Positions 33,550 through 61,941 of a stretch of 64,000 bases of DNA are shown here, piece by piece. Numbering within the stretch: the stretch's first letter is position 1; each line of letters opens with the position of its first letter. The DNA comes from Paragordius varius (lineage: Eukaryota; Animalia; Nematomorpha), in contig OZ176056.1 in assembly GCA_964247055.1 (NCBI GenBank), positions 9,362,001-9,426,000 of the forward strand, in the 5' to 3' direction. Under the pieces are notes generated by a model. It was not told the origin of the DNA, did no database searches, and saw nothing but the letters and a program-made list of their open reading frames with translations. The position numbers and the translations under genes are program-made.

Positions 33550-35640
33550 GTTGTTGTTTGCTAAGGTCGATTCCGACTAACTGCAACATTGAAAATAAAG
33601 CTTCTCCATTCACTGCGATTACCGGATCTGGTGTTTAGTTCGGATAATGATTGGCTGGTTTCTTTGAGGATGTTATCCATCCAACGAGTTTGTCTTCACC
33701 CTCTTTTACGAGCACCACTCACTTTTCCCAGCATCAGTGATTTTTCAAGTGAGTTGGATCTTATGATGTGCCCGAAGAAGGAGAGTTTTTGCCGTATTAA
33801 GCTGCCTAGAAGTGACATTTCTGGGTTAATTTTATTTAGAATGGTGGTGTTTGAAACTTTGTCCATTTTGTTTGAAAAAGTTTCCTCCAAACCCATAATT
33901 CGAAAGAGTTTATTTGACGTTCGTCATATTTTTTCAGTGTCCAGCTTTCCCCCCATATATAAATGTGGGAAAAACTGTAGCTTTGATTAATCTGATTTTG
34001 GTTTGTAGTTTAATGTCATGTGACATTTAACTGTTATATTTAAAAGTTACTGCTTTAGCAATAGCAATTCTTCGCTTTATTTCTGGCGTAGAGTTGTTCT
34101 CACTATTAATGATGCTACCTAAGTACGTGTAGCTACTAACTGTTTCGAGCTGGTTGCCGTTGAGGATTATTGGATTGGTTTGAGCAGGATTTATTTGCAT
34201 GAGATATTTAATCCAAATTTAATCCATTCAGTTGTAAGCACTTGCAAGGCTTGCGATAATGTGTCTACACTGTCTGCGAATAAGACTGTATCATCCGTGT
34301 AGTGAAGAACGGATGTAAGTAGGTTACCACCTACATTGATGCCATAAGTTTGTGGGATGTTTCTTATAATTCACCCCAGGTATGCTTTAAAAAGAATTGG
34401 TGATAAAACGCATCCTTGACGGAGGCCGACTTGTACCTTACATGAGTCTGATATACCGTGAGGTTTAGATATTACAGCCGTGGAATTTAAGTAAATTAAG
34501 AATATGACGTTGATTAGATGTGTTGACACTTCAAATTGTTTTAGAGCTTTCCGTAGTTTATTGTGCTGGATGGAATCAAATGCTTTGGAAAAATCGACAA
34601 AGCACATATGCAATTCTTTGTTCGATGTGTTTCTCGATTATCCACCTCATATTACATATCATATCTCGGCATCCTCTACCTTTTAGAAAACCAGCCTGAA
34701 TCGTGGATATCTCGGGATCAAGAATGGTATTTAGTCGAAACTGTATTATTTTTAGGAAAACTTTGGACACCTGGTTTATGAGCGCTATGGTGCGATAGTT
34801 GTCGCACAGTTCTGGATTACCCTTTTTTAAAATCGGAATCATAATGGATGTACACCAATCCTCAGGGATTTTTCCATCTCAAATATGGTTTGAAATAATT
34901 TGGTGAGTATGTCGATTGGAATATATTTTATTATTTCAGTAGGGATGTCTCTGTGGCCCTCTGATTTGCCGGTGCTAGAGTGTTTTATCGCGAGTTCCAC
35001 TTCTTCTTTCATAATAGCTGGTTCTTTTTGTTGAGCAAGTTCGTTAATAGTCGGGGGATTATTTACATTGTAAGTTTGCGAATTTCGTCTTTTTCAGTGA
35101 CGATTGAGTTGTTGTCGTTTCTTATAGGTCCCTTGTAAAAAACTTTTTTGTGTGGATTAATATTGTTTGCATGGGCAAAAAGGTTTCGGTTATTTTTGGC
35201 GTTTGTTTCTAATTTTTCACATAGTTGGTCATAATACTTATTTTTGTCTTCTCTTGCACTCTTCTGAAATTCACTGTTTAGTTGTTTGTATTCATCCCAT
35301 TTGCATTTGATTTTGGATTCTCTACGTTTTTCTGCGATCTCGAGACTTTTGGTTGACAATTTTATTTTTTTTTAATGCGTTTATGAGGCCGAATAAATTC
35401 GTCGGCTGTGACTCTGCAGATTGTATATATATAGCTTTCCAAAAGAAGTTTATATCCTGATAGTTTTCGGAATTATGATCAGGACAATCGAAACGATTTG
35501 ATAAAGCGGTGCTAAACTTGTCGTCGATTGTAACATAATCTAATCTTGTTCTTGTGGGTTTGGATGTTTTAGGAAGTTGTAATTTAATGCAGAGTTTGGC
35601 GATCAATAGGTTGTGGTCGCTGTAGCAATCCGATCCTGGT
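33550..35640 (-). mobile_element. Second RTE-like LINE copy, 5'-truncated and frameshifted
   Basis: Closely similar to 1-1250 in reverse complement (GLRQGCVLSPILF, SNTTILNKINPEMSLLGSL). (CAA)n tail at 33550-33560. Extends upstream to the SDH motif at the end of the endonuclease domain (~35620). Several indels. Confidence 0.92.
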
Positions 35641-36471
35641 AGAAACCAAGATTAATAAGATGAAAATTTGGAATATTATTATTTTTGAATAAAGAGTTTT
35701 TTTTAAATGAGTATAGTTATAATAATATGTTTAATATTTTACATGAAACAATTAGGCGATTGGTGTTAATAATGTAAAAGAGAAATTTTGCCTTATTTTT
35801 AGTTAAATAAAATGAGAGATTTATTTAATCCTATTCATTTAATATCTTAGTTAATGTTAAATAAAAAATGGTTTATTTAAAAGTCGGTTCAAATGCTATG
35901 TTATAGTTTTAAAACTTTTTAAACATACATAGTAAACATTAGCAGACTAGAATTCATGGGGTTATTTTTTATCAATATTATGGATGAGGTCTCCTCTTCA
36001 TATCCTATTATATTTCGGATTTATGTCCGTATAAAAAAATTTGTCCGCAAATTAAAAATTTTAATTTTTTGATTTTAACCCTATATCTGTTATAAAAAAA
36101 TTATGTTTGTTTGTTTAAAAATTCGTCCGGATAATTACATATTTTACTGTACACTTATTACCTACCTTTTATTCATATATCTGGCCATTTGATTTTTATA
36201 ATAAATTATGTTTGATTTAGTTGATATTTCGTTGTAAAATGAACTGAATAAAATTATCTGTATATCGTTAATTTATTCTATAACAATCATATATATAATC
36301 GCAATCTATGATAAAATTTTTTATATAAAAATATTGATATATTTTCCATAAATATGACTATGATAAAACTATTTAAACGGTTTTTGTTTAAGAGTTGATT
36401 GAGCAATTTTCGTTCATTGCAATTAGATTTAAAAAATAAATCCAGATTTGTGCATAGACGTAGAGAAATCT

Positions 36472-39030
36472 TTAAATATTAGGTTGCAAAAGGAGAGAAA
36501 ATTTTTGTAAAATTTGGTGAAAGAAAGGACGAGAATGTTGGTTGAAAGTCCACAATGTATCTTTAATATACTCGCCTAGATATGAGGGACAAATCTCGGG
36601 TAGGGGTAATCTCCAACCATCCTTTATCTATGATTACAGAAATCAAACATTTTAACAAGATAAATATGTAATGTTATATGTAATTAAATTGCGTGAAATA
36701 AAAGTTATTACTAGTTGTTCCATTAATACAGTCACTTGTTCATTGTTGGATATAGGAAGAGCAGGTCCTAATAATTGAAAAACCAAATATAGTAAATATT
36801 TAGGAGGATTATATTTTAAACTCTGTAGAATATAAACTTACGTATTTTGGGGTTATTTTGATCAGTCCCGTTGATTAAATCATTATAATATTGAGAAATG
36901 ATTTTGGATTTAGTTTGTGGTAGTGTAAAGATTTCTTCATTGATATATGAATGGTGGGGTTTATGGTTTAACGTTCTCGATGATTTCAAATTCTGCATTT
37001 CGTGAGAGTTTTGTGTGATGGAAAACATGGTTTGAGAAAGGGTTATGCTAGAGTTTGTTAAAATTTCCCAACAAACACTCCCAAAAGACCATACATCAGA
37101 TTTTGTGGTAATTGCGTTTGTGTCCTAATTAGGATGATTTTCTTTAGTTTTACGAATCAAAGGGGAAAAAATGTAGATTATAATACCGCTTACTTTAAAT
37201 AATTCGGGTGCCATCCAACCCAAATCGGATAAAACAATGTCATTTTCATCGTTGGGTTGGCCCTTATTTGATTTGTCTATATAATCGTTGCTGTTTATAG
37301 CATTTCGACACTTTCTCCCAAAATGAGCAATTTTAACTGTCTTGCCTTCATTCGTAATAAGAATATGACAAGCCTTAAGATCTCCATGAACTATTCCCAA
37401 TTCATCGTATAAAAACGCCATGCCCTATTTTCATATTGAATGTAATGAAAAATTGAAACTATAGATAGACAAAACGTAACAACATAGACAAATATTTTTT
37501 CAAAAAAACCGCTGAAACTTTTTAAGCTTAAATTGCAAAGTATGAAAGAGATATGTAAATAGATAACACAAATTATATGTTTTGCTGTAAAAAATATAAA
37601 AATGTTTGGTGTTGTCTTTTCTAAAAAAATATTTGTCTTTACTGAACTTTAGAGAGAGTGAACACTCGCGTAAAATATTTTAACAAATATATAAAGAATA
37701 TACCCTGGCAATATCTTTCATGTAAATCATTTTTTGTCGCAAAGTTATGTCCGGGCCATTCATTTGCAAATAATTGGACAAAGCTCCCATCTCCAAGTAC
37801 TCCATAACATATTTTTGTTTAATTATAACCACCAAAGTGTTATTAAACATGTTATTCCTACTAGTATATGATATGGGCATTCTTTCATCCTTTTTATAAG
37901 AATCTGATTGGAAGACATCATTTTCATCATTACACGATAAAATGCCCTGTGGGGTACATAAAAAATAATTTAAATGTAAAATATACTGAAAGCTATACAA
38001 TATACTATTTACACTTCGATTACCCCTTGAGAAATCTTTCTGGAAAACTAATTTAAGTCAATAATAATGATATGTGAAATATTTAGGACATGTTGATTTT
38101 TTCCCATATTATATTTATTTAAAAAAATAATTTTCAAAAATATAAAAATTTTTAGATTTGGAAAAAGTTTAAGGGTGAATAATATAAAATATTAAGTGTG
38201 ATATATAAATGGTATTTTAAAGGAAAAAATTTTATACATATTCATTTTCGATGAGCATTAGCAATTTTTGAATATGTAAAAACTAAAAAAACATACAGTA
38301 ATATTTTACAGGTAAAATGTAAAACCATAAAGAAATATTAGGTCAATAAAGGCCTTTTTTTCAAATCGTTTTAAAATTTCCAAAATAAGCCCTAGAGATG
38401 GTAATTGTTAGTCTTAATTTAAATAGTAATTAAATATTTATGCAGGAAAATCAAAGTCCTAAAAATATGGTTACCTTATTAAAACAATTTTTCTATTACT
38501 TTTTACATTTTATCTGTATAATGTAAATTTTTATTGTATACCATAGAAAAGTTTGTATACCTTAATGTGTGCAATGTTTGGATGTGGATTCAGAATGAGT
38601 TTTGGTAAAATAACTTGAAATAAAGGTAAAAGCAATACATTCTTTTGAACTTCTTGTGATTTGAGTGATGTAATTTCTCGATTATCATTATTGATATTAT
38701 TAACGAATGAGGGGGATTGTTGTATGTTAAATTGTTTAATCACTACTTTTTGACGAAAAAGATCGTTGAATTTGGTCCAGCAAGCTAACCAGGTATCATC
38801 TCCATTTTTATTCTACGCACAAATAAAAAATTGATAAAATTATATCCAACAATTTAATCCTTTGATTAGTTTACAATTTTTGGTTATATGTTTTCTTCAA
38901 TCGCTCCAATTATGAGGGGTAATATTCAAAAAATCAGTAATAATACAATAAATAAGTATATTATAAGATCGTATAAATTAAAACAAGAAATAAACTCTCA
39001 CCATCTCCCCCAATGATTTAATGTAGCGAA
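36472..39030 (-). CDS. JAK: JAK JH1 kinase-fold domain, exons 18-24, catalytic motifs altered
   Basis: IKSLGEM, VVIK, REI, HPNI, VMEYLEMGALSNYL, HGDLKACH, KIAHFG, WMAPE, SDVWSFG, GWRLPLPEICP, RP.F. Confidence 0.88.
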
Positions 39031-42000
39031 TTTGGGTTTCAGAAATGGTAAAAGCATTGGCTGAATTTTTGTCATTTTGATGGTTGTTGATAGAGAACGA
39101 AACAGTATAAGAGGAAGAACTTCGTCTCAATCCATTCGAGTGAGAATCATTACTTGTTATTGCAGAAGTCAAGAAGGGTATCATTGGAACATGTTTAAAA
39201 GAACAATTGCCAAAATTGTTATATGAATAATAATAAGGATTATTGCTGTAGTTGCTATTTCCAAGCAAATAGGTTTGCGAATGTGGATGACCGATACTCC
39301 TAAGTCCAGAGTAAGAATTTGAACGAAAACGAAATTTTTTTCTTAACAACCATTTTGGTTTCGTGGTTTCCTTAATATCGCCCAAAGTAGATAAAGGAGA
39401 AGAGGCGTTGTGTGGCAAAAGCCTAATGTAAGATTTTCCGTCAGACGCCATTAAAACATTTTTTCGTGGTGACGATGTGTCGCGCTGACTATGTCTTCTC
39501 AAAAGCGTGGATAAAATGTGTTGTTTAAATTGTCGCCAAATTTTGTTGGACCTTGAGAATCGTGGACGTTGTTTTTTGAGACAAGGTGCAGGCGAAGGAG
39601 ACTGTTTTTGAGGTAGAGGGGGTAAGGGCAATTGTGTGATATGACTTTTCAGTTCGAATGAATATTTTTTTAATCGTTTCTCCTCCTCAACAACAGGGAC
39701 AAGATTATTCATTGTCATTGAATTGATATGACCATTGACAAGCGGTAAATTGGTGGAAAAACTGTTTTTTTCTTTATTTTCTACGTGTCTTTTGGGTTCG
39801 GATTCATGGATTATGTTACTATAAATAATTAAGATAAATGTTGAATATCCAAATATTTATTTAATGACATTTTAAGCCACAAATATAGTCATGTGGTGTT
39901 TTGGTATTAATGATAACTTTTTTACATAGCTTTCCTAACACTCAATTATTAAATTAATAAAAGCATTAACTTATAGCGTATTTTGTATCATAAAAAGACT
40001 TTTCAGGAACAAATAGTAAGAAATATCAATATAAAAATTAGCATTTGGTTACTTTATATCTTTATTAGGGGAATTGGTGTTTTTAAAACTCATATCGTAT
40101 TGCAGAGAGTGGGGGTCGAAAGGGCGTCTTTTCAGAGTATCTAAAAAAGGAGAGAAATACTTACAAATTTTATATAAATCCATTATAAAATATAAAAACT
40201 TTTAATTTAAAATAACGATTTTGACGATCAAGAATATTAGGTTTAATTTATTTATTTATCTCCTATTCGACCCTATCAATATTAAAGCTCAAGAGATAAG
40301 TATATTATCGAATATTGAAGCCATTTTTCATATCGACCCATTTAAATTCTTCAAAAAATTTGGAAATATATATAAAAAATAGACTCGAGTAAAAACAATT
40401 TTAAAATATAATCAAAAGTGTCACCATTAAATTTGTTACGAGTTGGTTTATTTGTCGCGTTTGAATTCACAATCATTTCATTCGGTTTATCTGTATCATT
40501 GATATCCTTGTTCAATGTAATACTATATTCACTTTCAACATCGGTGGGTGAATATAAACTTTCATTAAGGCGGCATTCATGAAAAGTAGGAAGGGGGGAT
40601 TTTAATGTTTCATGATCCACATATCCATCTGACCCAATCCCAATCTCACCAACCTGGTTCTTAAAAGACGACGTTGGCGTTGACTTAACTAAAGAGTTTG
40701 CATTTAACGGTTCTAAAGCAGGGACAGCAGAATCTAAAGTTTTATGTTCAGACTTGTTCGCATTGGGCATATGTGATTTAGAGTTGCTAGAAAAACGATG
40801 ATGATTGATTCTAACATTAGACGGTTGAGAGATTTGACCATTGCTAATAGTATTGCTCTTAACAAACGCTTTTTCTGACGTAGAATTTGTAAAATTTGTT
40901 TGGTTATCACTGTGTTGCGTTTTATTAGTTTTTAGCTGGAGTTGGGAAAATTGCTTTCGTTTTTCGCGCGTATGCAAGAGAGAATAGAATATTTGATGGG
41001 TATCTCGTACCTTGAATATCAAAAAATGAAAACATATAATAATTCCACTTTTTGCCCATTTGCAGCATTTGCCTGGATTTTTTACACATGACAAAAAATA
41101 TCCTTAGAGCTTAAAATACACTTCTCAAAGTGTCCTTTAAATACCGTAAAAATATTTTTTTCGAAAAAAGTTGAACCGAATATATATTCTACCCGATTTC
41201 GGATAAAATATAATTTATGCCTTTGATTTTAAAAGAATTTTTACTTTAAAATACCGAGTCCAAAAACCCTCTGGTAATAAGTTAAAATTTTTACTGATTT
41301 GTAATTTATCTTTATATTCCTAATACTTTTGTGAATAATCATTGATAAATTATGTATGATTACCAATTCATGAATGCGTATTCTGTGGTCTTTGTCGCGT
41401 TGCCAACATTGTAAAAGGAGAGAATATAAGCGATCAGGACAATTTGCGGGTTTGGGTAATCTAACTTCTGTTCACAATACATAATAATATGTAAAAGATA
41501 AAATTTGTTACATATCTTCATATAGGGACAAAACATAAAAGTTAAAATTTAAAAGTATCTTTAAATTAAATGACCTAATATTAAACCACCCCCATATTTC
41601 TTACATAAAACATATAAATACAGTTTTGAAATATATAATTCAGATTTACAATTTCGATTTCCAATTATTATTTTGGGAAGATAGTAAATAAGAGTTACAA
41701 TGAAGTTTTAAAAATTTGAATAATATGGTTGTCTTATAAATTTTATTTCATTCAACTTTAAAATTATGACAATTAAAAGGATAATTTGTTATAAACTATG
41801 AAATATTTTACCATGATGCATAATGTTTGATAATAAAAGTGATAATAATAAGTTGGCTTCTTTCTCAATTTTGGTTTCAAAAACTACGCTTTTTAAGCCA
41901 TTTATTTCCGTTCCGCTAAGTGAGATATCAACAACATCATTAGAAACTACAGGATTGTTTTTTGGATTTATAATACTATTTTCCTCTATAGTATTTTGTA

Positions 42001-45000
42001 ACGAGTTTAGTAAATTTCGATAGGCGGATTTAATGGAAAACTGAGAGCTGCCAGATAAGCATAAAGCACTCAATGGGTTAACCGAAGCATACATAAGACT
42101 TTCCCACAAGAATGTACCGAAAGACCAAATATCATACCCTTCATCATTACTTATTGAGTCTGAGATTGAGATAGATATTGATGGGTTAAACGGTTTATTG
42201 ATAATCTTTATTAGATTAGAATTTAATAAGGAGGGAAATTTATCGGTTAAATATTGGTTGTGCTTTGAAGTGTGTTCTCCTTCATTCTCGCTGCAGTAAA
42301 AGAGTTCGGGACTTAACCAAGGTAATCTGCGTTGAATGATATTTAAAACATATATTAAGGTTAATTCAAAGGATAAGATAGATTTGTTACAAAAAGGCGT
42401 CAAATAGAGCACACTCAAAAAACATAGATAAACTAGAGTAAAAACTAAAGAGGAAACTTTTTTTAAAAATAAAATCTTAATTTTTTCATATCTAAACAAT
42501 TTTGTATCATTTTACAGGAAAAATGAAAATTATACGGACAAAATGTAAAATGGAGAAATATTTTTTATCAAAAGACAACACACCATGCATTTTTAAACCT
42601 TATTCTTTCCCATAAAAATTATTTAAACAACCAATTTTAAAATATAAATTGATTGTGTTATCAATTCATACTTTGCAGTTTAAATAAACTGCTATATTTT
42701 TAAAAATAACATGGTTAAAAAGTATGGGGGATTTATAAAATAATATTTGTCTTATGTTTTTACATTTTGCCTGTTTTAATTCTGTATTTGTTAAAATCTT
42801 AAACTATATGTAAATTAAGAGAGAAAGCAAACTTAAATAAGGCGTGATGTGGGCAGATTGCGTATAATTTATTGAGGCCTTCATCTAAGCTTTCAAAACC
42901 TTTGCTGAGATTAGTAGTAGGCTGAGCAACAGAGCTTTTGAAATAAGCCTCAAACGGATTTATGGAAAGAACTGGATCACAAAGTTTGACAGTCCAATTT
43001 TCTGGGAATGCTTTCTCTAAATCTAAAATCATCAATAATTTAAGGTTGTTTTTGTGCATTTAAAATCATCCGTTATAAATAAATTATAAAAAACAAACAA
43101 AAATTAACAATCTATCTATATTTTAAGTGCCCACTTGTAACAAGCCGTATATATCAAAATGTATGTTATATAAAATTAATAATATTAAAGTGATAAAAAG
43201 AGAAAAACAAACCGCAGTTATCTTCAAATTTATGATTTGGTTCTGTGGGCGTCCGATCTAGTAAAATTGATTGATAAATGATATAAAAATACGTAAAAAT
43301 TTAAATTTTAAAAAATTTAATATGTTGGCTTTGAGACAAAAATACGGAAATATAAATACATGTAGATTAAAAATTCTATCGATTTAACCCAGTTAGAATT
43401 GAGCGTGCAAATTTCTAAAAATAAAATCCAAGAATCGTATCTTTGACACAACTTTTCAAAAAACATGTAAACCCAAACAATTTCAGGACTAAAATTTATT
43501 GTTTTTACAAATGCAACGGCCTCTTACTTTATTGTCCGTTTTTTTATATCGGCAAATGTGTCACTATATAAAAAAACGTGGGTTCGAACCAATTTATCAG
43601 TATATTACCTCATTAAGAATTTTAGCGATTTCTAATCTGAAGGCAATTTTTTAGCCTAATCTTTTTTTAAAATAGAGACTGTTGATTAAAGGACCACCCT
43701 TCAAGCTTTTCCCGATATAAATAAGGTAGCTTGGAAACATTTTTTTCAATCAACCCTTGAATAAAGATATAGTAAAATCAAATTGGCTATTTCATGAATA
43801 TTTAATAACCAATAAGCCGTAACCGTATGTTAAATTCCCAACCATATAAAAATTATGTGGCTAGGAAGCATTTTTGAAAGGCTAATGTTATAAGTTATTA
43901 TATGGAATCCATATAACGATTTTAGGCGGATTTTTGATCGAATTTCAAAATAAGCATTAATAAACGACCCTATAAAAATAACGTGGCTTCAAAGCAAATC
44001 TTCGGTTATATAGATTCATTATTCATTTTTGTTGGTCCTATAGATTTGGTCAATAACTTTACTTTTTTAAAAAAGCACCTATTTAGGGCCCTAAGATCGT
44101 GTCAAGGACCCAATCTTTTTCTGAAAAAATAACAATTGTACGTGGGACAACTTTTTTGTTCCAAGTATAGTAATAAAATTGTTCAAAACTTTTTAGTTTG
44201 ACGTAAACATTGACAGCTCCAATGCGATTGTGGATGAGTGCTTTCTCATGCAAAAACCACAGGGCTCGTGAAATGGTCGCCCCGGCCTCTAATATACAAC
44301 ACACATCCACTCTTTCCTTTCCAGCAGAACGCAAAAAGGTCGCCCAGGAACCAAGTTCCAACTCTTCGGTTACAATCTATCAATCAAACAAAATTATATT
44401 TTTTGTAATACTTTTATGCAAAAAAAAAAATTTGAAATTTACAGATAAAACATAAAAATCTAAATAAAAAAACTAAAAGATCGCTATTATTATATTGAAC
44501 CTTGGTTACTATAACATAACCTATATAATATATTGTAAAATGAATAATTTTTAAAATCCCCATCTGGTGAGTTATATTTTTTAAATTCAATTAATATAGT
44601 TGCCATTTTAAAAGAAATATTTTTCTAATTTTTATGAATAAATGCAAACTAAAATAGTATATAATCAAAAAAAATGGATTTTACCAATAATGGATCCAAG
44701 CATACGCCATATATTTTGACAAGCGTGGGATCCGAAATAAATGCAAATTTGTTTAATGCTTTCAAAAATGTTACGGTCGCCATTTCTTCCGTATTAATAG
44801 GGCTAAGTATATTTTATATATAAAAAGATAAAGACAAGTATGTTTCAATAAAAAGACAACCACGTCTTTAAGAAAACTTGATTTTTAAATACAGTAAAAA
44901 TTGAAATTATACGGACAAAACTTGAAAATATAAAGACAAATGTTTTTTTTTTCGAAAAACAAACCATACTTTTTTTATGTTGATTTTTTTAAATATAACT

Positions 45001-48000
45001 CATTGTTTCAAACTACAAATTTAAATAGAAACGTAAATTGATAACATAATCAAATTTGTATTTTAAAATTGTAATTAAATGTTTTTTATAGGATAAAAGG
45101 TTTAAAAGTATGGTTGTCTTTTGAAAAAAATATTTGTCTTTATATTTTTACATTTTGTCCGTATAATTTCAATTTTTACTGGATTAGTTATCGTTTTGGG
45201 TTGTAAAATAAGGAAAAGAAACATGTAAATAGTAATGAACACTGAACTATATTCTATATATTGTATTTATAATGTTTAAGTAAGTAATCAAGTTTTAAAA
45301 AAGTATGGATGGTTTTCTTTTAGAGTAAATAAATATTTGTCTTTAAATTTTAAAGTTTTGTCCATAGTATTAATTTCAATTTTTACTGTAATAGCTACCT
45401 ACCTTGATTGATTATTTGACGTATAATAAGAAGTGATTATGGTTTTAAACGAAATTGGGATTTTGTGATATTTATCTTTGTGCCAAATCCCACCAGCCAT
45501 GAGTGAGGATCGCCCATTCAAAGTATTCGAAGCATTGAATTCTCCTTCAATTAGTCCTTAAATACAGTTTAAATATAAATTATACCATTTACAGTTCAAA
45601 TTCACCTTTGAACAATTCAAATTCACCCCCCTGAACAATTCAAATTTACCCTAAAAAAGATTATGTGTTTTTTAAAATTAAAAATTACCTATATTTTTTT
45701 ATATTCTTACAAAAATCAAATTTTGTTTAAAATTAATATAATACTGAAAAAATAATAAACTATCCCATAAAGATATATTTCATATTAATGATGAGTTATA
45801 TTAGCCAAAAAACGCATAATTTATTTTTAGAGGAATTTGAATTGTTCATGGGTGAATTTAATTGTAAATGGTATATTATAGGTTTTCATAAAAAAAACAA
45901 CCATATTTTTTCCAACCTTATTTTTCCAATATGTATATTATAAATAAGAATCCCGAAATATATAATTGAGTGTGCAATCACCCAAATTAATGAGTTTAAA
46001 AAACATCAAGAATCGAAAAATATAGGAATCTTTCGATAAAAATATTTGTCTTTTAGTTTTTATTTCTTAACTAATATTAATGGTTTTTAAATAATATATA
46101 AACCATTGGACATCCAAGTCCTTTTAGATTCCAAATGTTGATTTTAATTTCTTTTGATTCCATGTAATATTAATTATCACGTATAATTAATTCATTTCCC
46201 CATCATTTTTAACCTATTCTCTTTAATTAACCTAAACTTTTAAAGTATGCCAACTTTTTTTCATTCAAAAACTGTATTTATTACTTTTTCAATAATATTT
46301 TAATTATTATTATTTAATATTATGGTTTTAATTACATAAGGGTTTTCAGTTATCTAATTTTATTTAAATTATTGACGAATTGGAGAAAATTAGTTCAAAA
46401 CAAAAAAAAATTTTTCAAAATGAAAAATGTTATTAGAAAAAAAATAAATAGAAAATAGATAATTATAGTATACTTAACAAAAATAAAAAACCAACTTGAA
46501 ATGTTTAAGAATAACCTTGAAGTGTTATAAGGGACACTCTTAAAAGCAAATGGTTATTTATTAAATTAAAGAAAAACTTGAATTTTTAGTCATTAAAGTT
46601 TGACGAGAAAATAAATTTGGTGTTCGATTGATAGTTGGACGGGAGCTCAAAGAATTATACATTTCTTCACTGCTTAAAACATCATGATATTCAACTTTAT
46701 TGTTTAAGTTAGGATTTGTGCTTTGTGTTTCAAACACTTTATCGGTTTTATCATTAAAATGGGCAGTTTTTTGCAAAGTTATTGGGGGTTCCGTTTCCAC
46801 CAAGTATTGTTGTGGATTATTGTAAAACTTAGACTTATGTTTGTTATCATAGGAAGAAAAAGGTAATTCTAAATCCGCGAAAGCTATAAAGAGCAAAGGG
46901 GCCGCTTTTATAAGTTGATATTGTTGATAATTATCGCAGTCTACTAAATTGCGTTTGTGAGATTGGTTGATAATGGGTTCAGACCCATCATCATTTTTAT
47001 TTCCATTTACAGAATGATTCAAGGAATTTTCCGCCGAAAACGAATGATTTCCAATGAGACCGGCTGGATCGAGTATTTGTTTGAGAGCTATTTGCAACGT
47101 GGCATATTGAGCCAATCTTTCATCACTGTTGAATGTTAAACTTTTCGTTCGATGATTCGTTTTTTCACTCAAGTCAAACAAGTATCGATTACACAGCAGG
47201 AGTTCAGGAGCTAAATCATAATCGGAGGGCGGAATACACTTGGTGGGGTAAGTAAAAGGAACTCTCTCCCCACCACTCGAGTAAGCTTTTAACAAGGCTC
47301 GTAAGTTGGCGTATTGCAAAGGTTTTTGCTGTTGTTGAGATGGTAAAATGTTATCAGTATCAAGCTTTTCACCTAGAAATGTCCAATAGGAATTAGATTG
47401 TGGCGGTATTTGTAATAATGCTTTTATCATTTTGTTTTGGGGCAAGGAAGGATTGTTGAAATCTGATTCGTTTGTTTTGATAACAGATGTTGCATTTTCC
47501 GTGCTGTTTAAGAGTTGAATGGGTTCCTCATCAAAATTTTCTAAACCATATAACATAAAATATACACACCATTTACACCTAAAATTTAACCTAAATATAA
47601 ATTACGTGTTTTGGTGGGTTAATATACCATTTGCACTTCAAGAGTGTCCTTAAACAATTCAAGTTGGTCCTTGAACAATTCAAGTTGGTCCTTGAACAGT
47701 TTAAGTTGATCCTTGAACAATTCAAGTTGGTCCTTGAACAGTTCAAGTTGGTCCTTAAAATTTATAAATTTTGATTTAACCATAATTTTTGCATTTATTT
47801 TTTTATTTAATTATTTATTAACATAATTTTCTTTATTATATATTTATTCATTTAAAAATAAATTTTTTTATTGAAAAACCACTTTTTTGTTTAAAACTAT
47901 TTTTTTTTTCAATTGAACAAAATTATTGACTTTTAAATTTTTTTAATGAATTAATTACCCAGAAAACTTATATATTTTTTCATTTCGTGTTAAAATCTTA

Positions 48001-51000: not shown

Positions 51001-51437
51001 AGATTTTAATATGTATAGATAGCGGTGTTTAATTGGGTTTCTGTATAATTTTTAATGTATAATTTGAATGATATTATTAATTAAACCTCTGTCCTCAATC
51101 AATAGGACATCGAGTAGAAATCGATTGTAAGAATAATCCGATTGCCTCAAAATGTAAGAACCGGTCAGTGTTTTGATTTGACAATTAGTTTGTGCCATGG
51201 CTTGTTGTAACTTTTCACGAAATTTCAACTCAACGAATTCATCACTGTTAAATTTAATCATTCCGTTATTAACAATAATGAAATTGAAATTACACACTAC
51301 AAAGGGAAAACAGTAAAAATGTTAATATAAATATCAATCATACTTTTTGAAAGATTTTTTTTAATCATTATTATGAATTGCAAATCAAAAAATAAAGATG
51401 TAAATTGATAATTTTTGTGGATTTCTTTTGGATAATT

Positions 51438-51476
<39 letters not shown>

Positions 51477-54400
51477 GGTTGGTTGTCTTTTTAAAAAATA
51501 CCTACCTGTCTTTATAATTTTACGAGTATGTTTCTATTTTAACAGTAAATGTCAAAATGATAATTTATATAAATAATTCAAGCGCCATCTAAATAATTAT
51601 TATATAACTTTAGTTTTGAATAATGCAAAAATTCCAAACAAATATGACAAATATAGGTTTTTATAAAAAAATTATATTTCTAAACCTAAATTTTAATAAG
51701 TAATCTAATATATCGTTTTGGGTTTCAAATTAAAGTATTGAGATGTAAATTGGCAATTCGCACAAAATTTATCCTTCAAAATATAAAGGATAAAAAGCTA
51801 AGGATTAAAGTAAAAAATTATACAGAAAAATGCTAAATAAAAGACAACAATATTTTTAAATAAAGCCTCTTTTTGGATGCAAAAAAAGAATAGAGTTTAT
51901 ATTGTTAATATAAACTATTAAATTTTTTCATAATTTTTATTAAGTAATTTATATGACTAAAAAGTATAGTTTTCTTTAAAAAAATATTTGTCATTATATC
52001 TTCATATAATTTTAATTTTTATAAAAGACCACCATATTTTTTAAAAATCATGCTTCTTAATTTATAACCTATCTTTTTGGGTCGCAAAAAACAGGGAATT
52101 GAATGTTTTAATAAACATAAATATATAGTTTAAGATTATAATTAAATAGTTTATGGGGATATCGTCAAGGTAAATTCGTTATTATTGACTTTTTAAAATT
52201 TTTTACTGTAAAAATTATTTTTTACCCAACAGGTCCGTGAGAAGCCAGAGATTTGAGTTTGAGCAAAGTAGGAGAATAAACCAACGTGCAAAGATTGAAT
52301 GAAAATCGTTGACTTAATCGATAATATCCATCTAATAGACTTATAAACGATAACATGGCCAGATTTGTATTGAACGTGACAGTCTACAAATAAAGGGATT
52401 GTTTTGAAAACAACATCAATCAATTAAAAGTAAGTTAGCCATAAAAAAATAGGGGAGCTCTTTACAAAATATCAAAATATAAGTACAGTAATTGATAATA
52501 TACTATGGACAAAACGTAAAAATATAATAAAGACAAATAATTTTTCGAAAAGTGAGCCTTTGAATCTAAATTTTATAATGAAAACTTATTGTTTCAAAGT
52601 ATAAAATAGGAAATAAAGATGTAAATTGAAAAAACAATAATTATGTATTATACGATTGTAATTTAATTATTCGAATAGGATAAATTAAGGTTTGAAAAAG
52701 TATCATTGACTTTATTTTAAAAAAAGAAATTTGTCTTTACATTTATACGTTTTGTCCGTATAATTTCAATTTTTCCTGTATAAATTTTTTGGATAAAATA
52801 TTTACAACAATAAATGGTCGAGATAAATGCCAAAACCAAGCGAAAACGTGAATAAAAATAACGCTTTCGAAATTTGATAATATTTCTTCACCGAGTCATT
52901 AAAAGATTTAAAATATAGAGAGTGTACATAAAATAATCCTAATATATTTATAATAATCTAATGGATAGTGCTTTAAATTTTGGGCCTAAAACAAATATTT
53001 ACACTGGTTGATGATTGCTCCATAAAAAAATTGCAAATTAGCCACATTATGCTAAAAAAATGGTAAAATTTTCAAAAGATATCCTAAAAATATATCATCA
53101 TAAACTACATTTAAAAGCAAAAAATTTATTAATTAAGTTTTAGATCAGGGGTGTCCAACATAAATGGCTTCGCGGGCCGCATTTTATATTATGGACAATA
53201 AAAATAATTTATTAGAAATCAAACGGACTGCAAAATGATAACAATCAATTTTTTTCTAGTTCTTATTGCATTGACTTATATAAAATTTTTTAGAAATATC
53301 AATTTTGCTAAGAATTTGCGTTATTGTCGCAAATTATGAATTTCCGAATTTTAAAATTTTGCACCCCTCAAAATTAGGTTTTTTAAAACATAAACATGCA
53401 AAGATTACGTTGTAACAATAACTAATATAGGTAAGATTATGACATCAAAAAAATTATTATTGATTTTGGGTAAATATTTTAGCAAAATTGCGGATTTTTT
53501 TATATCATGTAATAAACTCTTTTAATTAAATTATGTTTGATTTAATTCAAGTATATATTTTAAACGGAATTTTTACTATAACGAGCCAATCTATTAAATT
53601 CATATTTTAATTGATACCCTTTAAATATGCTTTAAAAATTTGTTAAAAATTAAATTTTGGACAGAGTATGCCTATTTCAAAAAACTTGTTTAATATAATG
53701 AAATAAAAAAATTATTTTTGATTTTGGATAAATATTTTAGCAAAATTGCGGAATTTTTATAGCAGGCAAGAAACTCTTAAATAAATTATGTTTGATTTGA
53801 GTCAAATATATATTTTAAACATAATTTTTACTATAACGAGCCAATCTTTTAAAAAATAATTCATATTATAATTGATACCCTTTAAATATGCTTTAAAAAT
53901 TTGTTAAAATTTAAATTTGGACAAAGTATTATTATTTCAAAAAACTTGTTTAATATCATAATATATTATATTTTGAAAATAGTATCGCGCAATCTCAGCA
54001 TTTTATCAATTATTTTATTGTTTTTGAGGGGTCTAAATTGAAATCAAATTTAATTTAATACAATAATCAAATGTAAATTTTAATATATTAATTAATTTAT
54101 AATTAATCATTTAACTTTGTGCATAAAAAATTTATTCAAAATAAAGTACGCTAATATTGCGATTTTGCAATACGTAGCAATTAGCACAAAAGTGTATTTC
54201 TTATGTTACACATAAAGCTGAAAGCACCATAAGAATTTTGATACATTTATTACAGTAAAAATGGAAATTATACGGACAAAACGTAAAAATATAAAGAAAT
54301 TTTTTTTTAAAAAAAACATCCATACTGTTTAAAACCTAAATTTATCCTATAAATACATTTAAATACAATCATAAAATATATAATTGATTGTTTTACCGAT

Positions 54401-60190: not shown

Positions 60191-61941
60191 AAAATAAAGA
60201 TAGAGTTGGCTTTTTAGCATGACATTTCAAAGATACAGTAAAAACTGAAATTATACGGACAAAAAGTAAAAATATGAAGACAATATTTTTTTACTCTAAA
60301 AGACAACCCCATACTTTTATAAAACTTAATTTTTCTCACATAAATTATATAATTACAATTGTAAAATATATAATTGATTGCGTAACCAATATACATATTA
60401 ATTTTATACTTTGCAATTTAAAACAATAAGTTATATGTTAAAAAATAAAGTTCAAAAAAGTATGGATGTTTTTTAAAAGAAACCATTTGTCTTTATATTT
60501 TTAGGTTTTGTCCGTATAATTTCAATTTTTTCTGTTATACTCAGGCGTTATAAATGACCATTTAAAAGCAAAGTTTTCATACATTATGGACATCAAATAC
60601 AGTGTGATACTCAAACCGCGGTCCTAAAAGTGCTTATTATTCATGACCTTGAAATACTTTTGAACTTAAATATCTGCAAATGTGTCAAATAGTAATAAAA
60701 ATTTATCGGAATTAGAGCCCTAGAGATATGAAAAATATTTTTTTTAAGCCTAAAATTTGCTTTTAAGTTCCACCGATATTACATTTAATTTATAATGTAC
60801 CATTTATGTATGCCTCAAAATCAGCATCGAACATTTTAAATTCACCCTAAAAATAAATTTTCTGTTTTTAAAATTAAAAAATAGTACATTTTTAATATTT
60901 CTAAAAAAGGAAGGTTAGAAAGCTTTTTAAAACCATTTTAGCAGTATTTTTTTGTTTATTTTAAAGTCATATGTTCATTTTAATCGGGTTTTGGAGCTAT
61001 CCCAATTTGAAATTTTAGACGTTAAGAAAAATAGTTTTACCATGGAACAATGCTTGATAATTAAATTATTACTAAAATAACCTTCAAAATTACCCTAAAA
61101 TGTATTATTTGAAAAAAAATATAAGGTATTCAAATGTTTAAAAGGCTATCTCACCCCTATAAAATATTAAAAAGCGCAATAAATCAAATACTTCATAAAA
61201 GAATTTAGATGGCATCTTAGGTGCTAGCAAGCTTTCTTTAACAGCTTTTCGTAAAGCACGCCGACCTGAAACCGCAAATCTAATTCGGTCTCTTGCTGAA
61301 TTCAAATAATCGTTTGGCACATAAGTCTCCAGATGATTGAGTAAAAGGGCAGACGATTTGAGTTTAGTGCGTAATAAATGATTAGAACTGTTTGAAACTG
61401 GAACATTTGCAATGTCATCATGTAATAATAATGGTGAATTTTTTGGAGAATCTTTTTGTGTTGAGTCAATGCTCCTCTCATTAAAATTATTGGAGGATTG
61501 GTTTAATGTCATGCGACAAACATCGGCAACAACCAGACCAAGACTATCAGATAGTTTTAGAAGATTAATATTTGGAATACAAGAGTTAATAAAGTCATGT
61601 CGTGTTTGATGGAACAAATAATTAAAAGCGGATGAATCGTTTTCCATAAGTTGTGGAATAGATGCTGGTAAAAATCGCAATCTATAATATATTTTCACAT
61701 TGAGGTGGTCTAATTTTAAATCATTATTGCTATTGACTAGATTAAAGGAAGGTGGAAGAAAAATATTTTTAGTTGGGAGATAAAGTGCAAACATAAAAAA
61801 TGATTGTGTTTTAAATCCAAGCGCTCGGGAAATGTAATTGCAAACCTCTTCTGAATATAAAGTTTTTGAATTTTTATTTAGGTATACTTTAAAAATGTGG
61901 TCATAAAAAGTGCTAATATAAATAAAATCCTGGGTTGCCAT
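36472..61941 (-). CDS. JAK: Janus kinase (JAK/Hopscotch-like), 24 exons, ~2,218 aa, with a degenerate JH1 kinase domain
   Basis: Exons (minus strand): 61941-61192, 56067-55862, 55590-55467, 54845-54639, 52383-52226, 51244-51087, 50591-50569, 49114-49027, 47540-46578, 45556-45403, 44802-44685, 44376-44190, 43022-42833, 42326-41812, 41467-41364, 41010-40425, 40140-40053, 39818-39002, 38812-38561, 37946-37704, 37424-37194, 37124-36842, 36767-36712, 36627-36472. All are GT-AG and phase-consistent, total 6657 nt. The domain order FERM, SH2-like, pseudokinase, kinase is diagnostic of JAKs. The junctions of exons 7-8 are the least certain. Confidence 0.92.
41364..47150 (-). CDS. JAK: JAK JH2 pseudokinase domain, exons 9-15
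   Basis: LTFNSDERL, LVKIYGVCL, ELGSWATFL, HNRIGAVNV (cf. HGNVCAKNI), VKLCDPV (cf. KLSDPG), LPWLSPE (cf. IPWVPPE), DIWSFGTFLWE, RLPKP.NCP...LLQCW. Confidence 0.88.
42515..42784. mobile_element. MITE family A copy (degenerate)
   Basis: TA|CAGGAAAAATGAAAATTATACGGACAAAA ... TTTTACATTTTG...TCTG|TA. Confidence 0.7.
44892..45181. mobile_element. MITE family A (Tc1/mariner-like, CAGT...ACTG termini, ~285 bp, TA target)
   Basis: TA|CAGTAAAAATTGAAATTATACGGACAAAA ... TTTTGTCCGTATAATTTCAATTTTTACTG, with long (~90-100 bp) inverted arms. Confidence 0.88.
45585..45871. mobile_element. MITE family B copy
   Basis: TA|CCATTTACAGTTCAAATTCACCTTTGAACAATTCAAATTCACCC ... GGGTGAATTTAATTGTAAATGG|TA. Confidence 0.85.
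47250..51244 (-). CDS. JAK: JAK SH2-like domain exons 6-9
   Basis: TGSYILRQSDYSYNRFLLDV, GYKHL, NFSNIKDF and TKCIPP match remembered JAK SH2-like motifs (GLYVLRCS, YKHC, NFSSLKDL, TKCCPP). Confidence 0.8.
47627..48218. mobile_element. Second family C foldback copy, interior inverted relative to 11730-12627, one end truncated
   Basis: TA|CCATTTGCACTTCAAGAGTGTCC, then about 5 21-bp units. The interior is the reverse complement of 11890-12310. The right arm has only about 2 units. Confidence 0.85.
48671..48965. mobile_element. MITE family A copy
   Basis: CAGTAAAAATTAAAATTATACGG ... AATTTCAATTTTTACTG|TA. Confidence 0.8.
49273..50521. mobile_element. 1249-bp near-palindromic element with TA target duplication
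   Basis: TA|CTGTGTGCAAAAAA ... TTTTTTGCACACAG|TA. The arms (~590 bp each) pair up to ...GGAATATCAACCAACAATCC / GGATTGTTGGTTGATATTCC..., leaving a ~50-bp spacer (49861-49909). Confidence 0.9.
52226..61941 (-). CDS. JAK: JAK FERM domain exons 1-5
   Basis: EEVC...FALY...FLPPS...YYRLRFLP...YLFHQTRHDF...LGLVV and MKYLETL. The signature SFISLLDGYYRL...NLC...SPTLL...HGPV is in exon 52383-52226, in a different frame from the listed ORF 52193-52423. Confidence 0.9.
53146..53960 (+). mobile_element. hAT (Charlie-like) 5' end followed by a ~258-bp tandem duplication
   Basis: TTTTAGAT|CAGGGGTGTCCAACA...CGCGGGCCGCA resembles hAT termini. 53455-53700 is repeated at 53713-53960. The other terminus was not found. 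Confidence 0.5.
54253..54534. mobile_element. MITE family A copy
   Basis: TA|CAGTAAAAATGGAAATTATACGGACAAAACG ... TGTCCGTATAATTTCAATTTTTACTG|TA. Confidence 0.9.
55591..55863. mobile_element. Degenerate MITE family A copy co-extensive with JAK intron 2
   Basis: Right arm CATTTTGTCTGTATAATTTTTGATTTTTACTG ends at 55863. The inner left arm AAATATTTT...AAAAGACAACCCTACTTT is at 55632-55667. Confidence 0.7.
56556..56835. mobile_element. MITE family A copy
   Basis: TA|CAGTAAAAATTGAAATTATACGG...ACAAAACG; right arm TATTTGTCTTTATATTTTTACGTTTTGTCC with an eroded end. Confidence 0.8.
57661..57792. mobile_element. 132-bp hairpin MITE
   Basis: TATAGTAGGGCG...AACACAACAGTAGTGTATGGAAAAAA / TTTTTTCCATACACTACTGTTGTGTT...CGCCTTACTATA. 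Confidence 0.8.
57961..58200. mobile_element. MITE family B copy
   Basis: CAATTTACAGTTCAAATTCACCCC ... GGATGAATTTTAATTGTAAATGG|TA. Confidence 0.75.
59261..59505. mobile_element. MITE family B copy
   Basis: TA|CCATTTACAGTTCAAATTCACCCTGGAAC ... GTTCAAGGGTGAATTTGAACTGTAAATGG. Confidence 0.85.
60236..60534. mobile_element. MITE family A copy
   Basis: TA|CAGTAAAAACTGAAATTATACGGACAAAAAG ... TTTTGTCCGTATAATTTCAATTTTTTCTG. Confidence 0.88.

What the first reader, a model, noticed from the sequence alone, without database searches (positions are those of the whole stretch)
36472..39030. A Janus kinase whose active (JH1) domain also looks catalytically dead: a double-pseudokinase JAK
Seen in the sequence: the C-terminal kinase fold reads LGEMNKNG where GxGxFG is expected, HGDLKACH (37388-37365) where tyrosine kinases have HRDLAARN, and KIAHFG (37325-37317) where KIGDFG is expected. 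The activation segment (INSNDYIDK) has one Tyr, not the JAK YY pair. The VAVK Lys (VVIK), the alphaC Glu (REI) and the HRD Asp are kept. Established: the DFG Asp and catalytic-loop Asn coordinate Mg2+, and JAKs (including Drosophila Hop) have a pseudokinase JH2 plus an active JH1. Inference: with JH2 also degenerate, this protein may be a kinase-dead scaffold or decoy. It might still bind cytokine receptors through its recognisable FERM-SH2 module and act allosterically or as an inhibitor. The reading frame stays intact over 24 exons, which argues for selection rather than decay, and several independent substitutions argue against a single base-call error.
Basis: partly seen in the sequence, partly recalled or inferred. 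Interest (0 to 1): 0.85.

Follow-up and report, generated by a model that had tools for sequence, protein, structure and literature searches.

The report
JAK gene with degenerate JH1 kinase
An AT-rich invertebrate genome (a horsehair worm, according to earlier scan notes) carries an intact Janus kinase gene whose normally active C-terminal kinase domain has lost both magnesium-binding residues; if confirmed, it would be the first JAK with two non-canonical kinase domains.

Summary
On the minus strand, seven GT-AG exons (39002 down to 36472) encode a tyrosine-kinase-like domain. It reads SLGEM|NKNG at the glycine loop, HGDLKACH at the catalytic loop and KIAHFG in place of DFG. One activation-loop Tyr is kept.

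Upstream on the same strand lie a JAK-type FERM, an SH2-like segment and a JH2-type pseudokinase, so this is a JAK-family gene. No alternative canonical catalytic exon exists anywhere in the window. Independent DNA runs reproduce the sequence. A diverged second version keeps the His codon through a synonymous change.

The listed coding differences give omega of about 0.3, and all listed indels are intronic. This argues for selection rather than decay.

By the standard sequence definition, JH1 is a pseudokinase. Whether it is truly inactive is untested. STRADalpha has a His at the same Asn position and binds ATP without a cation. A textbook glycine loop (IGIGSDGYV) sits in a linker exon upstream.

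Still open:
- There is no RNA evidence.
- No orthologues could be fetched.
- Whether JH2 and JH1 are joined in one transcript is unproven.
- I did not verify the taxon.

The scan noted the same state before on another piece of this genome (s1-368131).

The parts
61141..61941 (-). First large coding exon, starting at the ATG at 61941. It encodes JAK-type FERM F1 and F2. The 3' boundary is approximate.
   Evidence: Pfam FERM_F1 PF18379 scores 27.7 bits (cutoff 26.1) and FERM_F2 20.7 bits. The only PDB sequence hits are TYK2 and JAK2 FERM-SH2 chains.
52225..52383 (-). Open segment holding the end of the FERM F3 (PH-like) lobe. Boundaries are approximate.
   Evidence: Weak Pfam Jak1_Phl PF17887 match, E=0.0044. 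The motif SFISLLDGYYRL was read by eye.
51055..51321 (-). Open segment holding the N-terminal half of the SH2-like domain. Boundaries are approximate.
   Evidence: Weak Pfam SH2_1 PF21990 match, E=0.065. The motif GSYILRQS was read by eye.
46564..47556 (-). 331-codon ORF: the end of the SH2-like region followed by a long low-complexity SH2-JH2 linker.
   Evidence: ORF list. No Pfam match. The assignment is by eye only.
44197..44376 (-). JH2 hinge to catalytic loop (LIHNRIGAVNVYV). The catalytic Asp is replaced by Arg.
   Evidence: Pfam PK_Tyr_Ser-Thr. The PDB alignment to LCK puts HNR on HRD, and JAK2 JH2 chains are also among the hits.
41792..42301 (-). JH2 C-lobe exon (RRLPWLSPE, DIWSFGTFLWE, NPLSAL) with an insertion of roughly 70 codons.
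   Evidence: Weak Pfam and PDB kinase matches at DIWSFG.
41364..41469 (-). Last JH2 exon (RLPKPANCPDRLYSLLLQCW...HEL). The donor GT is at 41363.
   Evidence: Pfam PK_Tyr_Ser-Thr profile positions 221-255, E=1.1e-6. Sequence.
40397..41010 (-). Linker exon A (a model; part of a 250-codon open segment). It contains a canonical glycine-loop motif, VGEIGIGSDGYV, at 40653-40618 (core IGIGSDGYV 40644-40618).
   Evidence: The phase-0 acceptor at 41010 fits the JH2 donor. GC is 33-38% against 18-25% in introns. Motif scan.
39002..39818 (-). Linker exon B (a model; part of a 292-codon open segment). It ends with the start of JH1, ISETQIRYIKSLGEM.
   Evidence: GC is 34-42%. No Pfam match.
38561..38812 (-). 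JH1 N-lobe exon: NKNG (degenerate glycine loop), the VVIK Lys, the REITSLKS alphaC Glu and an insertion.
   Evidence: X5 contig is identical over 38598-38834. Weak profile alignment of the Lys. No Pfam or PDB hit.
37704..37946 (-). JH1 hinge exon (VMEYLEMGALSNYLQ).
   Evidence: Pfam PK_Tyr_Ser-Thr, E=7.8e-4. Only JAK1 JH1 chains appear among kinase hits, and weakly.
37194..37424 (-). JH1 catalytic exon: HGDLKACH (37388-37365), KIAHFG (37334-37317), an activation segment with one Tyr, and WMAPE.
   Evidence: Pfam, KIT alignment, profile alignment. The variant contig keeps the His codon, CAT to CAC.
36842..37124 (-). JH1 exon with SDVWSFG and a long insertion. It ends in phase 1.
   Evidence: Pfam E=4.7e-7. 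PDB tyrosine-kinase hits.
36712..36767 (-). Short JH1 exon (PALPISNNEQVTVLMEQL).
   Evidence: Spliced frame.
36472..36627 (-). Last JH1 exon (IKDGWRLPLPEICP...HSRPFF) with the TAA stop at 36474-36472.
   Evidence: Pfam profile positions 217-258. PDB hits include JAK1 JH1 and full-length JAK1.

Best explanation
This is a genuine, fast-evolving JAK-family gene. Its C-terminal JH1 domain keeps the kinase fold but has lost the canonical Mg-ATP chemistry.

Kept: a recognisable C-lobe, a probable beta3 Lys and alphaC Glu, the HxD Asp, APE, DxWSFG and the subdomain XI Arg.

Lost: the catalytic-loop Asn and the DFG Asp are both His, the local glycine loop is degenerate, the tyrosine-kinase AAR signature reads KAC, and the activation-loop Tyr pair is reduced to one.

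JH1 is therefore a pseudokinase by the sequence definition, next to a JH2 that lacks the catalytic Asp. The gene is kept open by selection.

The most likely mode of action is inferred, not shown. The protein would act as a non-catalytic receptor-bound scaffold or allosteric partner. The two His residues may take the place of the metal ions and allow cation-independent nucleotide binding, as in STRADalpha. STAT phosphorylation, if it occurs, would then depend on other tyrosine kinases.
For: - JAK identity: Pfam FERM_F1 is above its cutoff, with weaker FERM_F2, Jak1_Phl and SH2_1 matches. The FERM exon hits only TYK2 and JAK2 in the PDB. There are two kinase folds in JAK order, and JH2 has HNR where HRD is expected.
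- Motif mapping: the KIT alignment and the profile alignment put His on the Asn and His on the DFG Asp.
- No alternative canonical catalytic-loop or DFG exon exists in any frame of the window.
- Not an error: contigs from other runs and studies match, and a diverged version keeps HGDLKACH with three synonymous changes and one I-to-M change.
- Selection: the 423-codon JH1 frame is open in DNA that is about 70% AT. Twenty-two listed coding differences split 10 synonymous to 12 non-synonymous, giving omega of about 0.31 and P=0.008 against neutrality. All 10 listed X1 indels are intronic. High-copy repeats sit only in introns.
- Mechanistic precedents: STRADalpha binds ATP without a cation, using a His at the Asn171-equivalent position and an Arg at the DFG-Asp position (PMC4718504). 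TYK2 has kinase-independent functions (PMC4589058, PMC3377589).
- An earlier scan note reports the same His/His state in a second copy on another piece of the genome.
Against: - There is no RNA evidence for expression or for the exon joins. No RNA run held the sequence.
- No orthologue from another species could be retrieved, so the age of the changes is unknown.
- The omega estimate rests on 22 differences, which are a non-random subset of those found.
- One X1 contig differs by about 11% across the N-lobe exon and part of the adjacent intron. The N-lobe is not recognised by Pfam or the PDB, so that part may be weakly constrained.
- JH2 and JH1 are separated by about 480 low-complexity codons, and the splice model across them is only phase-compatible, not observed.
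- A canonical glycine loop lies upstream in the linker.
- Sequence-based calls of a dead kinase have failed before, as with CASK (PMC4718504).
Confidence: 0.6

Rival explanations
1. JH1 is an atypical but active kinase. It would transfer phosphate without Mg2+, as CASK does, or use the two His residues to hold another metal such as Mn2+ or Zn2+. An isoform might supply the canonical glycine loop encoded in linker exon A.
For: - The HxD Asp, the probable beta3 Lys, the alphaC Glu and one activation-loop Tyr are kept.
- Both lost residues became His rather than random residues.
- CASK lacks the DFG Asp yet is active without cations (PMC4718504).
- The motif IGIGSDGYV lies in frame at 40644-40618. 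A phase-0 GT at 40620 is compatible with the acceptor at 38812.
Against: - According to PMC4718504, an intact glycine loop together with the beta3 Lys has been the best predictor of activity. Here the loop adjacent to JH1 is degenerate, and the isoform that would use the upstream loop is hypothetical.
- The tyrosine-kinase AAR signature is lost (KAC).
- The N-lobe is too diverged for Pfam or the PDB to recognise.
- The candidate donor reads gtggat, unlike the gta or gtgag donors used elsewhere in JH1.
Confidence: 0.15
2. The JH1-like exons are a decaying or unexpressed remnant. The functional JAK product would end after JH2 or in the linker, or the whole locus would be one of two duplicated copies drifting towards loss.
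For: - No RNA evidence was found.
- The N-lobe is unrecognisable to Pfam and the PDB.
- One diverged contig shows about 11% difference over the N-lobe exon region.
- Earlier scan notes list many degenerate kinases in this genome.
- Nematodes, said to be the sister group, have lost JAK altogether (PMC13203501).
Against: - Seven exons with canonical splice sites give 423 codons with no stop, in DNA where about 8% of random codons would be stops.
- Omega is about 0.3, and the listed indels fall only in introns.
- The catalytic-loop exon shows 3 synonymous changes to 1 conservative change between versions.
- Exon GC is above intron GC.
Confidence: 0.1
3. Gene fission: FERM-SH2-JH2 (with a tail) and the JH1-like domain (with its own N-terminal low-complexity region, for example from the ATG at 39718) are two separate genes. 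The locus would then be a JAK without JH1 plus a free-standing pseudokinase.
For: - The spacer of about 480 codons is far longer than the short JH2-JH1 linker I recall for known JAKs.
- An ATG opens the 246-codon ORF at 39718.
- The donor needed for the 40397-to-39818 join (gtttttac) is weak.
Against: - The segments lie on the same strand in the exact JAK order.
- Long open, GC-elevated segments fill the gap.
- At least two phase-compatible GT-AG paths join JH2 to JH1 without stops.
Confidence: 0.12
4. Assembly or base-call artefact at the key codons.
For: None found.
Against: - Contigs from other runs and studies match the window. X5 shows 0-1 differences over several exons.
- An independent diverged version has the same residues in the catalytic loop.
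- Several separate codons are involved.
Confidence: 0.02

Closest known systems
Janus kinases (human JAK1/JAK2/TYK2, Drosophila Hopscotch)
   Same: The domain order is FERM, SH2-like, JH2 pseudokinase, then a C-terminal kinase fold. The FERM exon matches only TYK2 and JAK2 in the PDB and matches the JAK-type Pfam FERM_F1 family. JH2 lacks the catalytic Asp.
   Different: JH1 has His for the catalytic-loop Asn and His for the DFG Asp, KAC where AAR is expected, a degenerate local glycine loop and one activation-loop Tyr instead of two. There are very long insertions between SH2 and JH2, inside JH2, between JH2 and JH1 (about 480 codons) and inside JH1.
STRADalpha pseudokinase
   Same: It has a His at the position of the catalytic-loop Asn and a basic residue at the DFG-Asp position. 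In STRADalpha these stand in for the cation, so that ATP binds without metal and the domain takes an active-like shape for allosteric work (PMC4718504).
   Different: STRADalpha has Arg (GLR), not His, at the DFG position. It belongs to the STE20 group and works with MO25 and LKB1. Nucleotide binding by the worm JH1 is untested.
CASK CaM-kinase domain
   Same: It lacks the DFG Asp but keeps the catalytic Asp and the beta3 Lys, so it was once called a pseudokinase (PMC4718504).
   Different: CASK has an intact glycine-rich loop and is shown to be active without Mg2+. Here the loop next to JH1 is degenerate and activity is unknown.
Kinase-inactive TYK2 (K923E mice)
   Same: It shows that a JAK protein can have biological roles without kinase activity (PMC4589058, PMC3377589).
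   Different: That is an engineered point mutant in a mammal. Here the loss is natural and affects several motifs.
Nematode STAT signalling without JAK (C. elegans STA-1/STA-2)
   Same: A related lineage, if the hairworm assignment holds, runs STAT proteins without a catalytic JAK (PMC13203501). A STAT gene is noted elsewhere in this genome (not checked by me).
   Different: C. elegans has no JAK gene at all. Here the JAK gene is retained and apparently under selection.

Membership tests
Janus kinase (JAK) family | N-terminal JAK-type FERM domain (F1, F2, F3) | tested here: met
   Pfam FERM_F1 scores 27.7 bits against a cutoff of 26.1. FERM_F2 (20.7 bits) and Jak1_Phl (17.4 bits) are below their cutoffs. 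The PDB hits are TYK2 and JAK2 only.
Janus kinase (JAK) family | Atypical SH2 domain between FERM and JH2 | tested here: inconclusive
   Pfam SH2_1 gives E=0.065. The motifs GSYILRQS and PTKCIPP were recognised by eye only.
Janus kinase (JAK) family | JH2 pseudokinase domain lacking the catalytic Asp | tested here: met
   Pfam kinase matches on the JH2 exons. HNR aligns to HRD of LCK, and JAK2 JH2 chains are among the hits.
Janus kinase (JAK) family | C-terminal JH1 with a full catalytic motif set (GxGxxG, VAIK Lys, HRDLAARN, DFG, activation-loop YY) | tested here: not met
   The fold is present, but the Asn and the DFG Asp are both His, AAR reads KAC, the local glycine loop is degenerate and there is one Tyr.
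Janus kinase (JAK) family | All four modules in one polypeptide | not testable with these tools
   The order and strand fit, and phase-compatible splice paths exist. No RNA run holds the locus.
Pseudokinase (sequence definition: lacks the beta3 Lys, the HRD Asp or the DFG Asp) | At least one of the three catalytic residues is absent in JH1 | tested here: met
   The DFG Asp is replaced by His at 37325-37323.
STRADalpha-like cation-independent ATP-binding pseudokinase (works-like comparison, not homology) | Basic residues at the Asn and DFG-Asp positions, and ATP binding without metal | tested here: inconclusive
   The residue pattern is met as His/His, against His/Arg in STRADalpha (PMC4718504). 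ATP binding cannot be tested here.
CASK-like atypical active kinase (works-like comparison) | Intact glycine-rich loop plus beta3 Lys despite the missing DFG Asp | tested here: not met
   The loop adjacent to JH1 reads GEMNKNG. A canonical loop exists only about 345 codons upstream in the linker.

The most novel reading that the evidence does not exclude
This is the first natural JAK in which both kinase-like domains are non-catalytic, and it is kept under selection. In a lineage next to the nematodes, which have STATs but no JAK, it would be a living intermediate in the loss of JAK catalysis. The JAK would survive as a receptor scaffold or as an allosteric, possibly nucleotide-sensing, module, while STAT activation has moved to other kinases.
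Probability: 0.45. Interest if true: 0.8.

Novelty: new variant of a known kind. Interest (0 to 1): 0.6.

Why it matters
Every JAK studied so far pairs a regulatory pseudokinase (JH2) with an active kinase (JH1), and the whole JAK-STAT model rests on JH1 trans-phosphorylation. A JAK retained under selection with a non-canonical JH1 would matter in three ways:
- It would be a natural experiment on the kinase-independent roles of JAKs, such as receptor scaffolding, trafficking and allostery.
- It would give a stepwise picture of how the nematode lineage came to run STATs without any JAK.
- It would add a new His/His solution at the two metal-binding positions to the list of pseudokinase active sites, directly testable with recombinant protein.

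Tried and rejected
- **Orthologue searches came up blank.** The search for homologous proteins with the 77-aa catalytic exon, with the 246-aa linker/JH1-start ORF and with a neighbouring 376-aa ORF found nothing. That neighbouring ORF is a clear Pfam galactosyltransferase. The blanks therefore reflect the word index and the speed of evolution of this genome, not absence of relatives.
- **The exhaustive representative search gave no JAK.** The catalytic exon found no orthologue and no JAK. The best hits (E=7e-10) are fungal or metagenomic multi-kinase TKL-like proteins. Two of them share HGDLKxxH with a non-DFG motif, which I read as convergence.
- **A home-made kinase profile could not separate two models.** It could not tell the model with linker exon B from the model that skips it.
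- **Structure prediction of JH1 was left out.** The spliced protein has no reference, and long letters must not be typed into a call.
- **The taxon could not be verified with the tools.** "Horsehair worm" comes from earlier scan notes only.
- **Literature searches found nothing directly relevant.** I found no paper on JAK in Nematomorpha or on a JAK with a degenerate JH1.
- **A hidden canonical exon is rejected.** A six-frame motif scan found no canonical catalytic-loop or DFG exon in the window.
Full report
**What is there.** The region 36472-39030 lies in a multi-exon gene on the minus strand of an AT-rich window (about 70% A+T). Reading the strand and joining seven exons with canonical GT-AG borders gives an uninterrupted frame that ends at the TAA at 36474-36472. 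The exons are ...39002, 38812-38561, 37946-37704, 37424-37194, 37124-36842 (phase 1), 36767-36712 and 36627-36472.

- SLGEM|NKNG is split by an intron.
- VVIK and REITSLKS lie in exon 38812-38561.
- HGDLKACH is at 37388-37365.
- KIAHFG has its HFG at 37325-37317.
- The activation segment INSNDYIDK has a single Tyr.
- WMAPE, SDVWSFG and RLPLPEICP follow.

**It is a kinase fold, and the key residues map as claimed.** Pfam PK_Tyr_Ser-Thr matches the hinge, catalytic, alphaF and C-terminal exons, in order along the profile. A PDB sequence search aligns the catalytic exon to KIT, with HGDLKACH on HRDLAARN, HFG on DFG, and the single Tyr on the KIT activation-loop Tyr. A profile I built from the 73 kinase domains of the best database hits gives the same mapping.

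The N-lobe exon is much more diverged. It has no Pfam family and no PDB chain at E<=10. Only a weak profile alignment puts the VVIK Lys on the VAVK Lys. The Lys and alphaC Glu are therefore probable, not proven.

A six-frame motif scan of the whole 64 kb finds no other catalytic-loop or DFG-type exon. No hidden canonical JH1 exon is available for alternative splicing.

**It is a JAK.** Upstream on the same strand, in JAK order, lie the following:
- An exon starting at the ATG at 61941 matches the JAK-type Pfam FERM_F1 above its curated cutoff, and FERM_F2 below it. Its only PDB hits are TYK2 and JAK2 FERM-SH2 chains.
- A segment gives a weak Jak1_Phl match and another a weak SH2_1 match.
- A second kinase fold has its catalytic loop aligned as HNR on HRD. 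It therefore lacks the catalytic Asp, as JH2 domains do.

The protein is full of long insertions. There is a 331-codon ORF after the SH2-like part, about 70 extra codons inside JH2, and about 480 low-complexity codons between JH2 and JH1.

**One gene or two?** The JH2-JH1 gap holds two open segments of 250 and 292 codons. Runs that long are very unlikely by chance in DNA of this composition. Their GC content is 33-42%, against 18-25% in the introns.

Phase-compatible GT-AG paths join JH2 to JH1 without stops. One uses donor 41364 to acceptor 41010, then donor 40397 to acceptor 39818. Another uses donor 40471 to acceptor 39685.

No RNA run held the locus, so a single transcript is the most economical reading but is not shown. 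I give a fission into two genes about 12%.

**Not an error, and probably under selection.** Contigs from runs of other samples and studies reproduce the window. X5 has 0-1 differences over 38598-38834, 37901-38481 and 39011-39295.

X1 and X5 also hold diverged versions. In X1 the depths are about 60 for the window-identical version and about 45-55 and 117-127 for the variants. This pattern fits two loci, or deeply diverged haplotypes; that is my inference.

In the catalytic-loop exon the variant differs at four places. Three are synonymous, including the His codon (CAT to CAC), and one changes Ile to Met.

Of the 22 coding differences that the tool listed, 10 are synonymous and 12 are not. With 399 synonymous and 1,536 non-synonymous sites, this gives omega of about 0.31 and P=0.008 against neutrality.

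All 10 indels listed for X1 fall in introns. The very high-copy repeats at 37426-37767 and 38452-38622 are intronic too.

Some caution is needed. The listed differences are the best-supported subset of 459, and one variant contig differs by about 11% over the N-lobe exon plus 46 intron bases.

**How it most likely works.** By the accepted sequence definition, a pseudokinase lacks the beta3 Lys, the HRD Asp or the DFG Asp. JH1 meets that definition, so the protein has two non-canonical kinase domains.

What replaced the two metal ligands may be informative, because both are His. The review PMC4718504 records that STRADalpha binds ATP without any cation. There, His200 at the Asn171-equivalent position and Arg215 at the DFG-Asp position stand in for the metal, and the ATP-bound pseudokinase works allosterically.

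I therefore favour a STRADalpha-like reading. JH1 would be a non-catalytic module, possibly still binding nucleotide, on a receptor-bound FERM-SH2 scaffold. Kinase-independent roles of a JAK have precedent in Tyk2 K923E mice (PMC4589058, PMC3377589). This step is inference.

The same review notes that CASK lacks the DFG Asp yet is active without Mg2+. It also notes that an intact glycine loop together with the beta3 Lys has been the best predictor of activity.

A textbook glycine loop, VGEIGIGSDGYV, lies in frame in linker exon A at 40653-40618 (core IGIGSDGYV at 40644-40618). This is about 135 codons after the end of JH2. Only one other GxGxxG occurs in all six frames of the window.

A phase-0 GT at 40620 could join it to the NKNG exon. 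That would put a canonical loop 27 residues before the VVIK Lys. The site is a weak-looking donor and there is no RNA evidence. It would not restore the Asn or the Asp. It does keep an atypical-activity rival alive, which I put at about 15%.

**Context and novelty.** Earlier scan notes call this genome a horsehair worm's. They also report the same His/His JAK on another piece of the genome, with a follow-up that reached the same reading (s1-368131). A STAT gene is noted elsewhere. I could not verify the taxon or fetch the other copy.

The diverged contigs are consistent with a second copy that keeps the catalytic-loop residues.

C. elegans has STATs but no JAK (PMC13203501). If the taxon is right, this gene would be an intermediate state in the loss of JAK catalysis in that wider lineage.

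I found no report of a JAK with a degenerate JH1. The searches were limited and the comparative data are missing. I rate it a new variant of a known kind.

**Limits.**
- There is no expression data.
- There are no orthologues.
- There is no structure model, because the spliced JH1 has no reference to hand in.
- The omega estimate comes from a small, selected sample.
- The count of 24 exons is not verified.

Noticed in passing
window 40618-40653 (minus strand): A canonical glycine-rich loop motif, VGEIGIGSDGYV (core IGIGSDGYV at 40644-40618), lies in frame in the JH2-JH1 linker exon, about 345 codons upstream of the degenerate SLGEM|NKNG. It could be a relic or duplicate of the JH1 first strand, or part of an alternative isoform through a GT at 40620.
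   Followed up: partly
window 37426-37767 and 38452-38622: Very high-copy repeats sit inside JH1 introns, with summed contig depth up to about 150,000 in X1 against about 230 for unique sequence. Inverted-repeat arms at 38290-38349 and 38476-38535 suggest a MITE.
   Followed up: partly
window 36400-41500, in runs X1 and X5: Two independent studies each hold a window-identical version plus one or two diverged versions, about 2-12% different. In X1 the depths are roughly 1:1:2. This suggests a duplicated JAK locus or deeply diverged haplotypes.
   Followed up: partly
window 36400-41500, in runs X6, X7 and X8: Runs labelled as three other organisms hold exact 151-290-nt pieces of this locus at depth 2-5. 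This may be the worm's DNA in other samples, for example hosts or mislabelled material.
   Followed up: no
window 47646-47756, 48170-48218 and 12218-12723: 21-nt tandem repeats are open in several frames on both strands (translating as KDQLELF and NLNCSRT). One array lies just upstream of the 331-codon JAK exon.
   Followed up: no
window 100-1230 (+) and 33589-35606 (-): Non-LTR retrotransposon reverse-transcriptase ORFs: one intact 376-aa RVT_1 ORF, and broken copies just downstream of the JAK 3' end.
   Followed up: partly
window 1368-2498 (-): A single-exon 376-aa ORF is a clear Pfam Galactosyl_T (E=2.9e-26). It found no homologue at E<=1e-5 in the word-indexed 5.8-billion-protein search. 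This shows how little a blank from that tool means for this genome.
   Followed up: partly
P0007 and P0006 (metagenomic proteins): Tandem-kinase proteins from JGI metagenomes have a domain with HGDLKGNH and GYG or EYG in place of DFG. The same Asn-to-His change is paired with loss of the DFG Asp, apparently by convergence.
   Followed up: partly
window 53432-53956 and 62019-62299: Two-copy tandem duplications of 255 nt and 142 nt lie in JAK introns or the upstream region.
   Followed up: no
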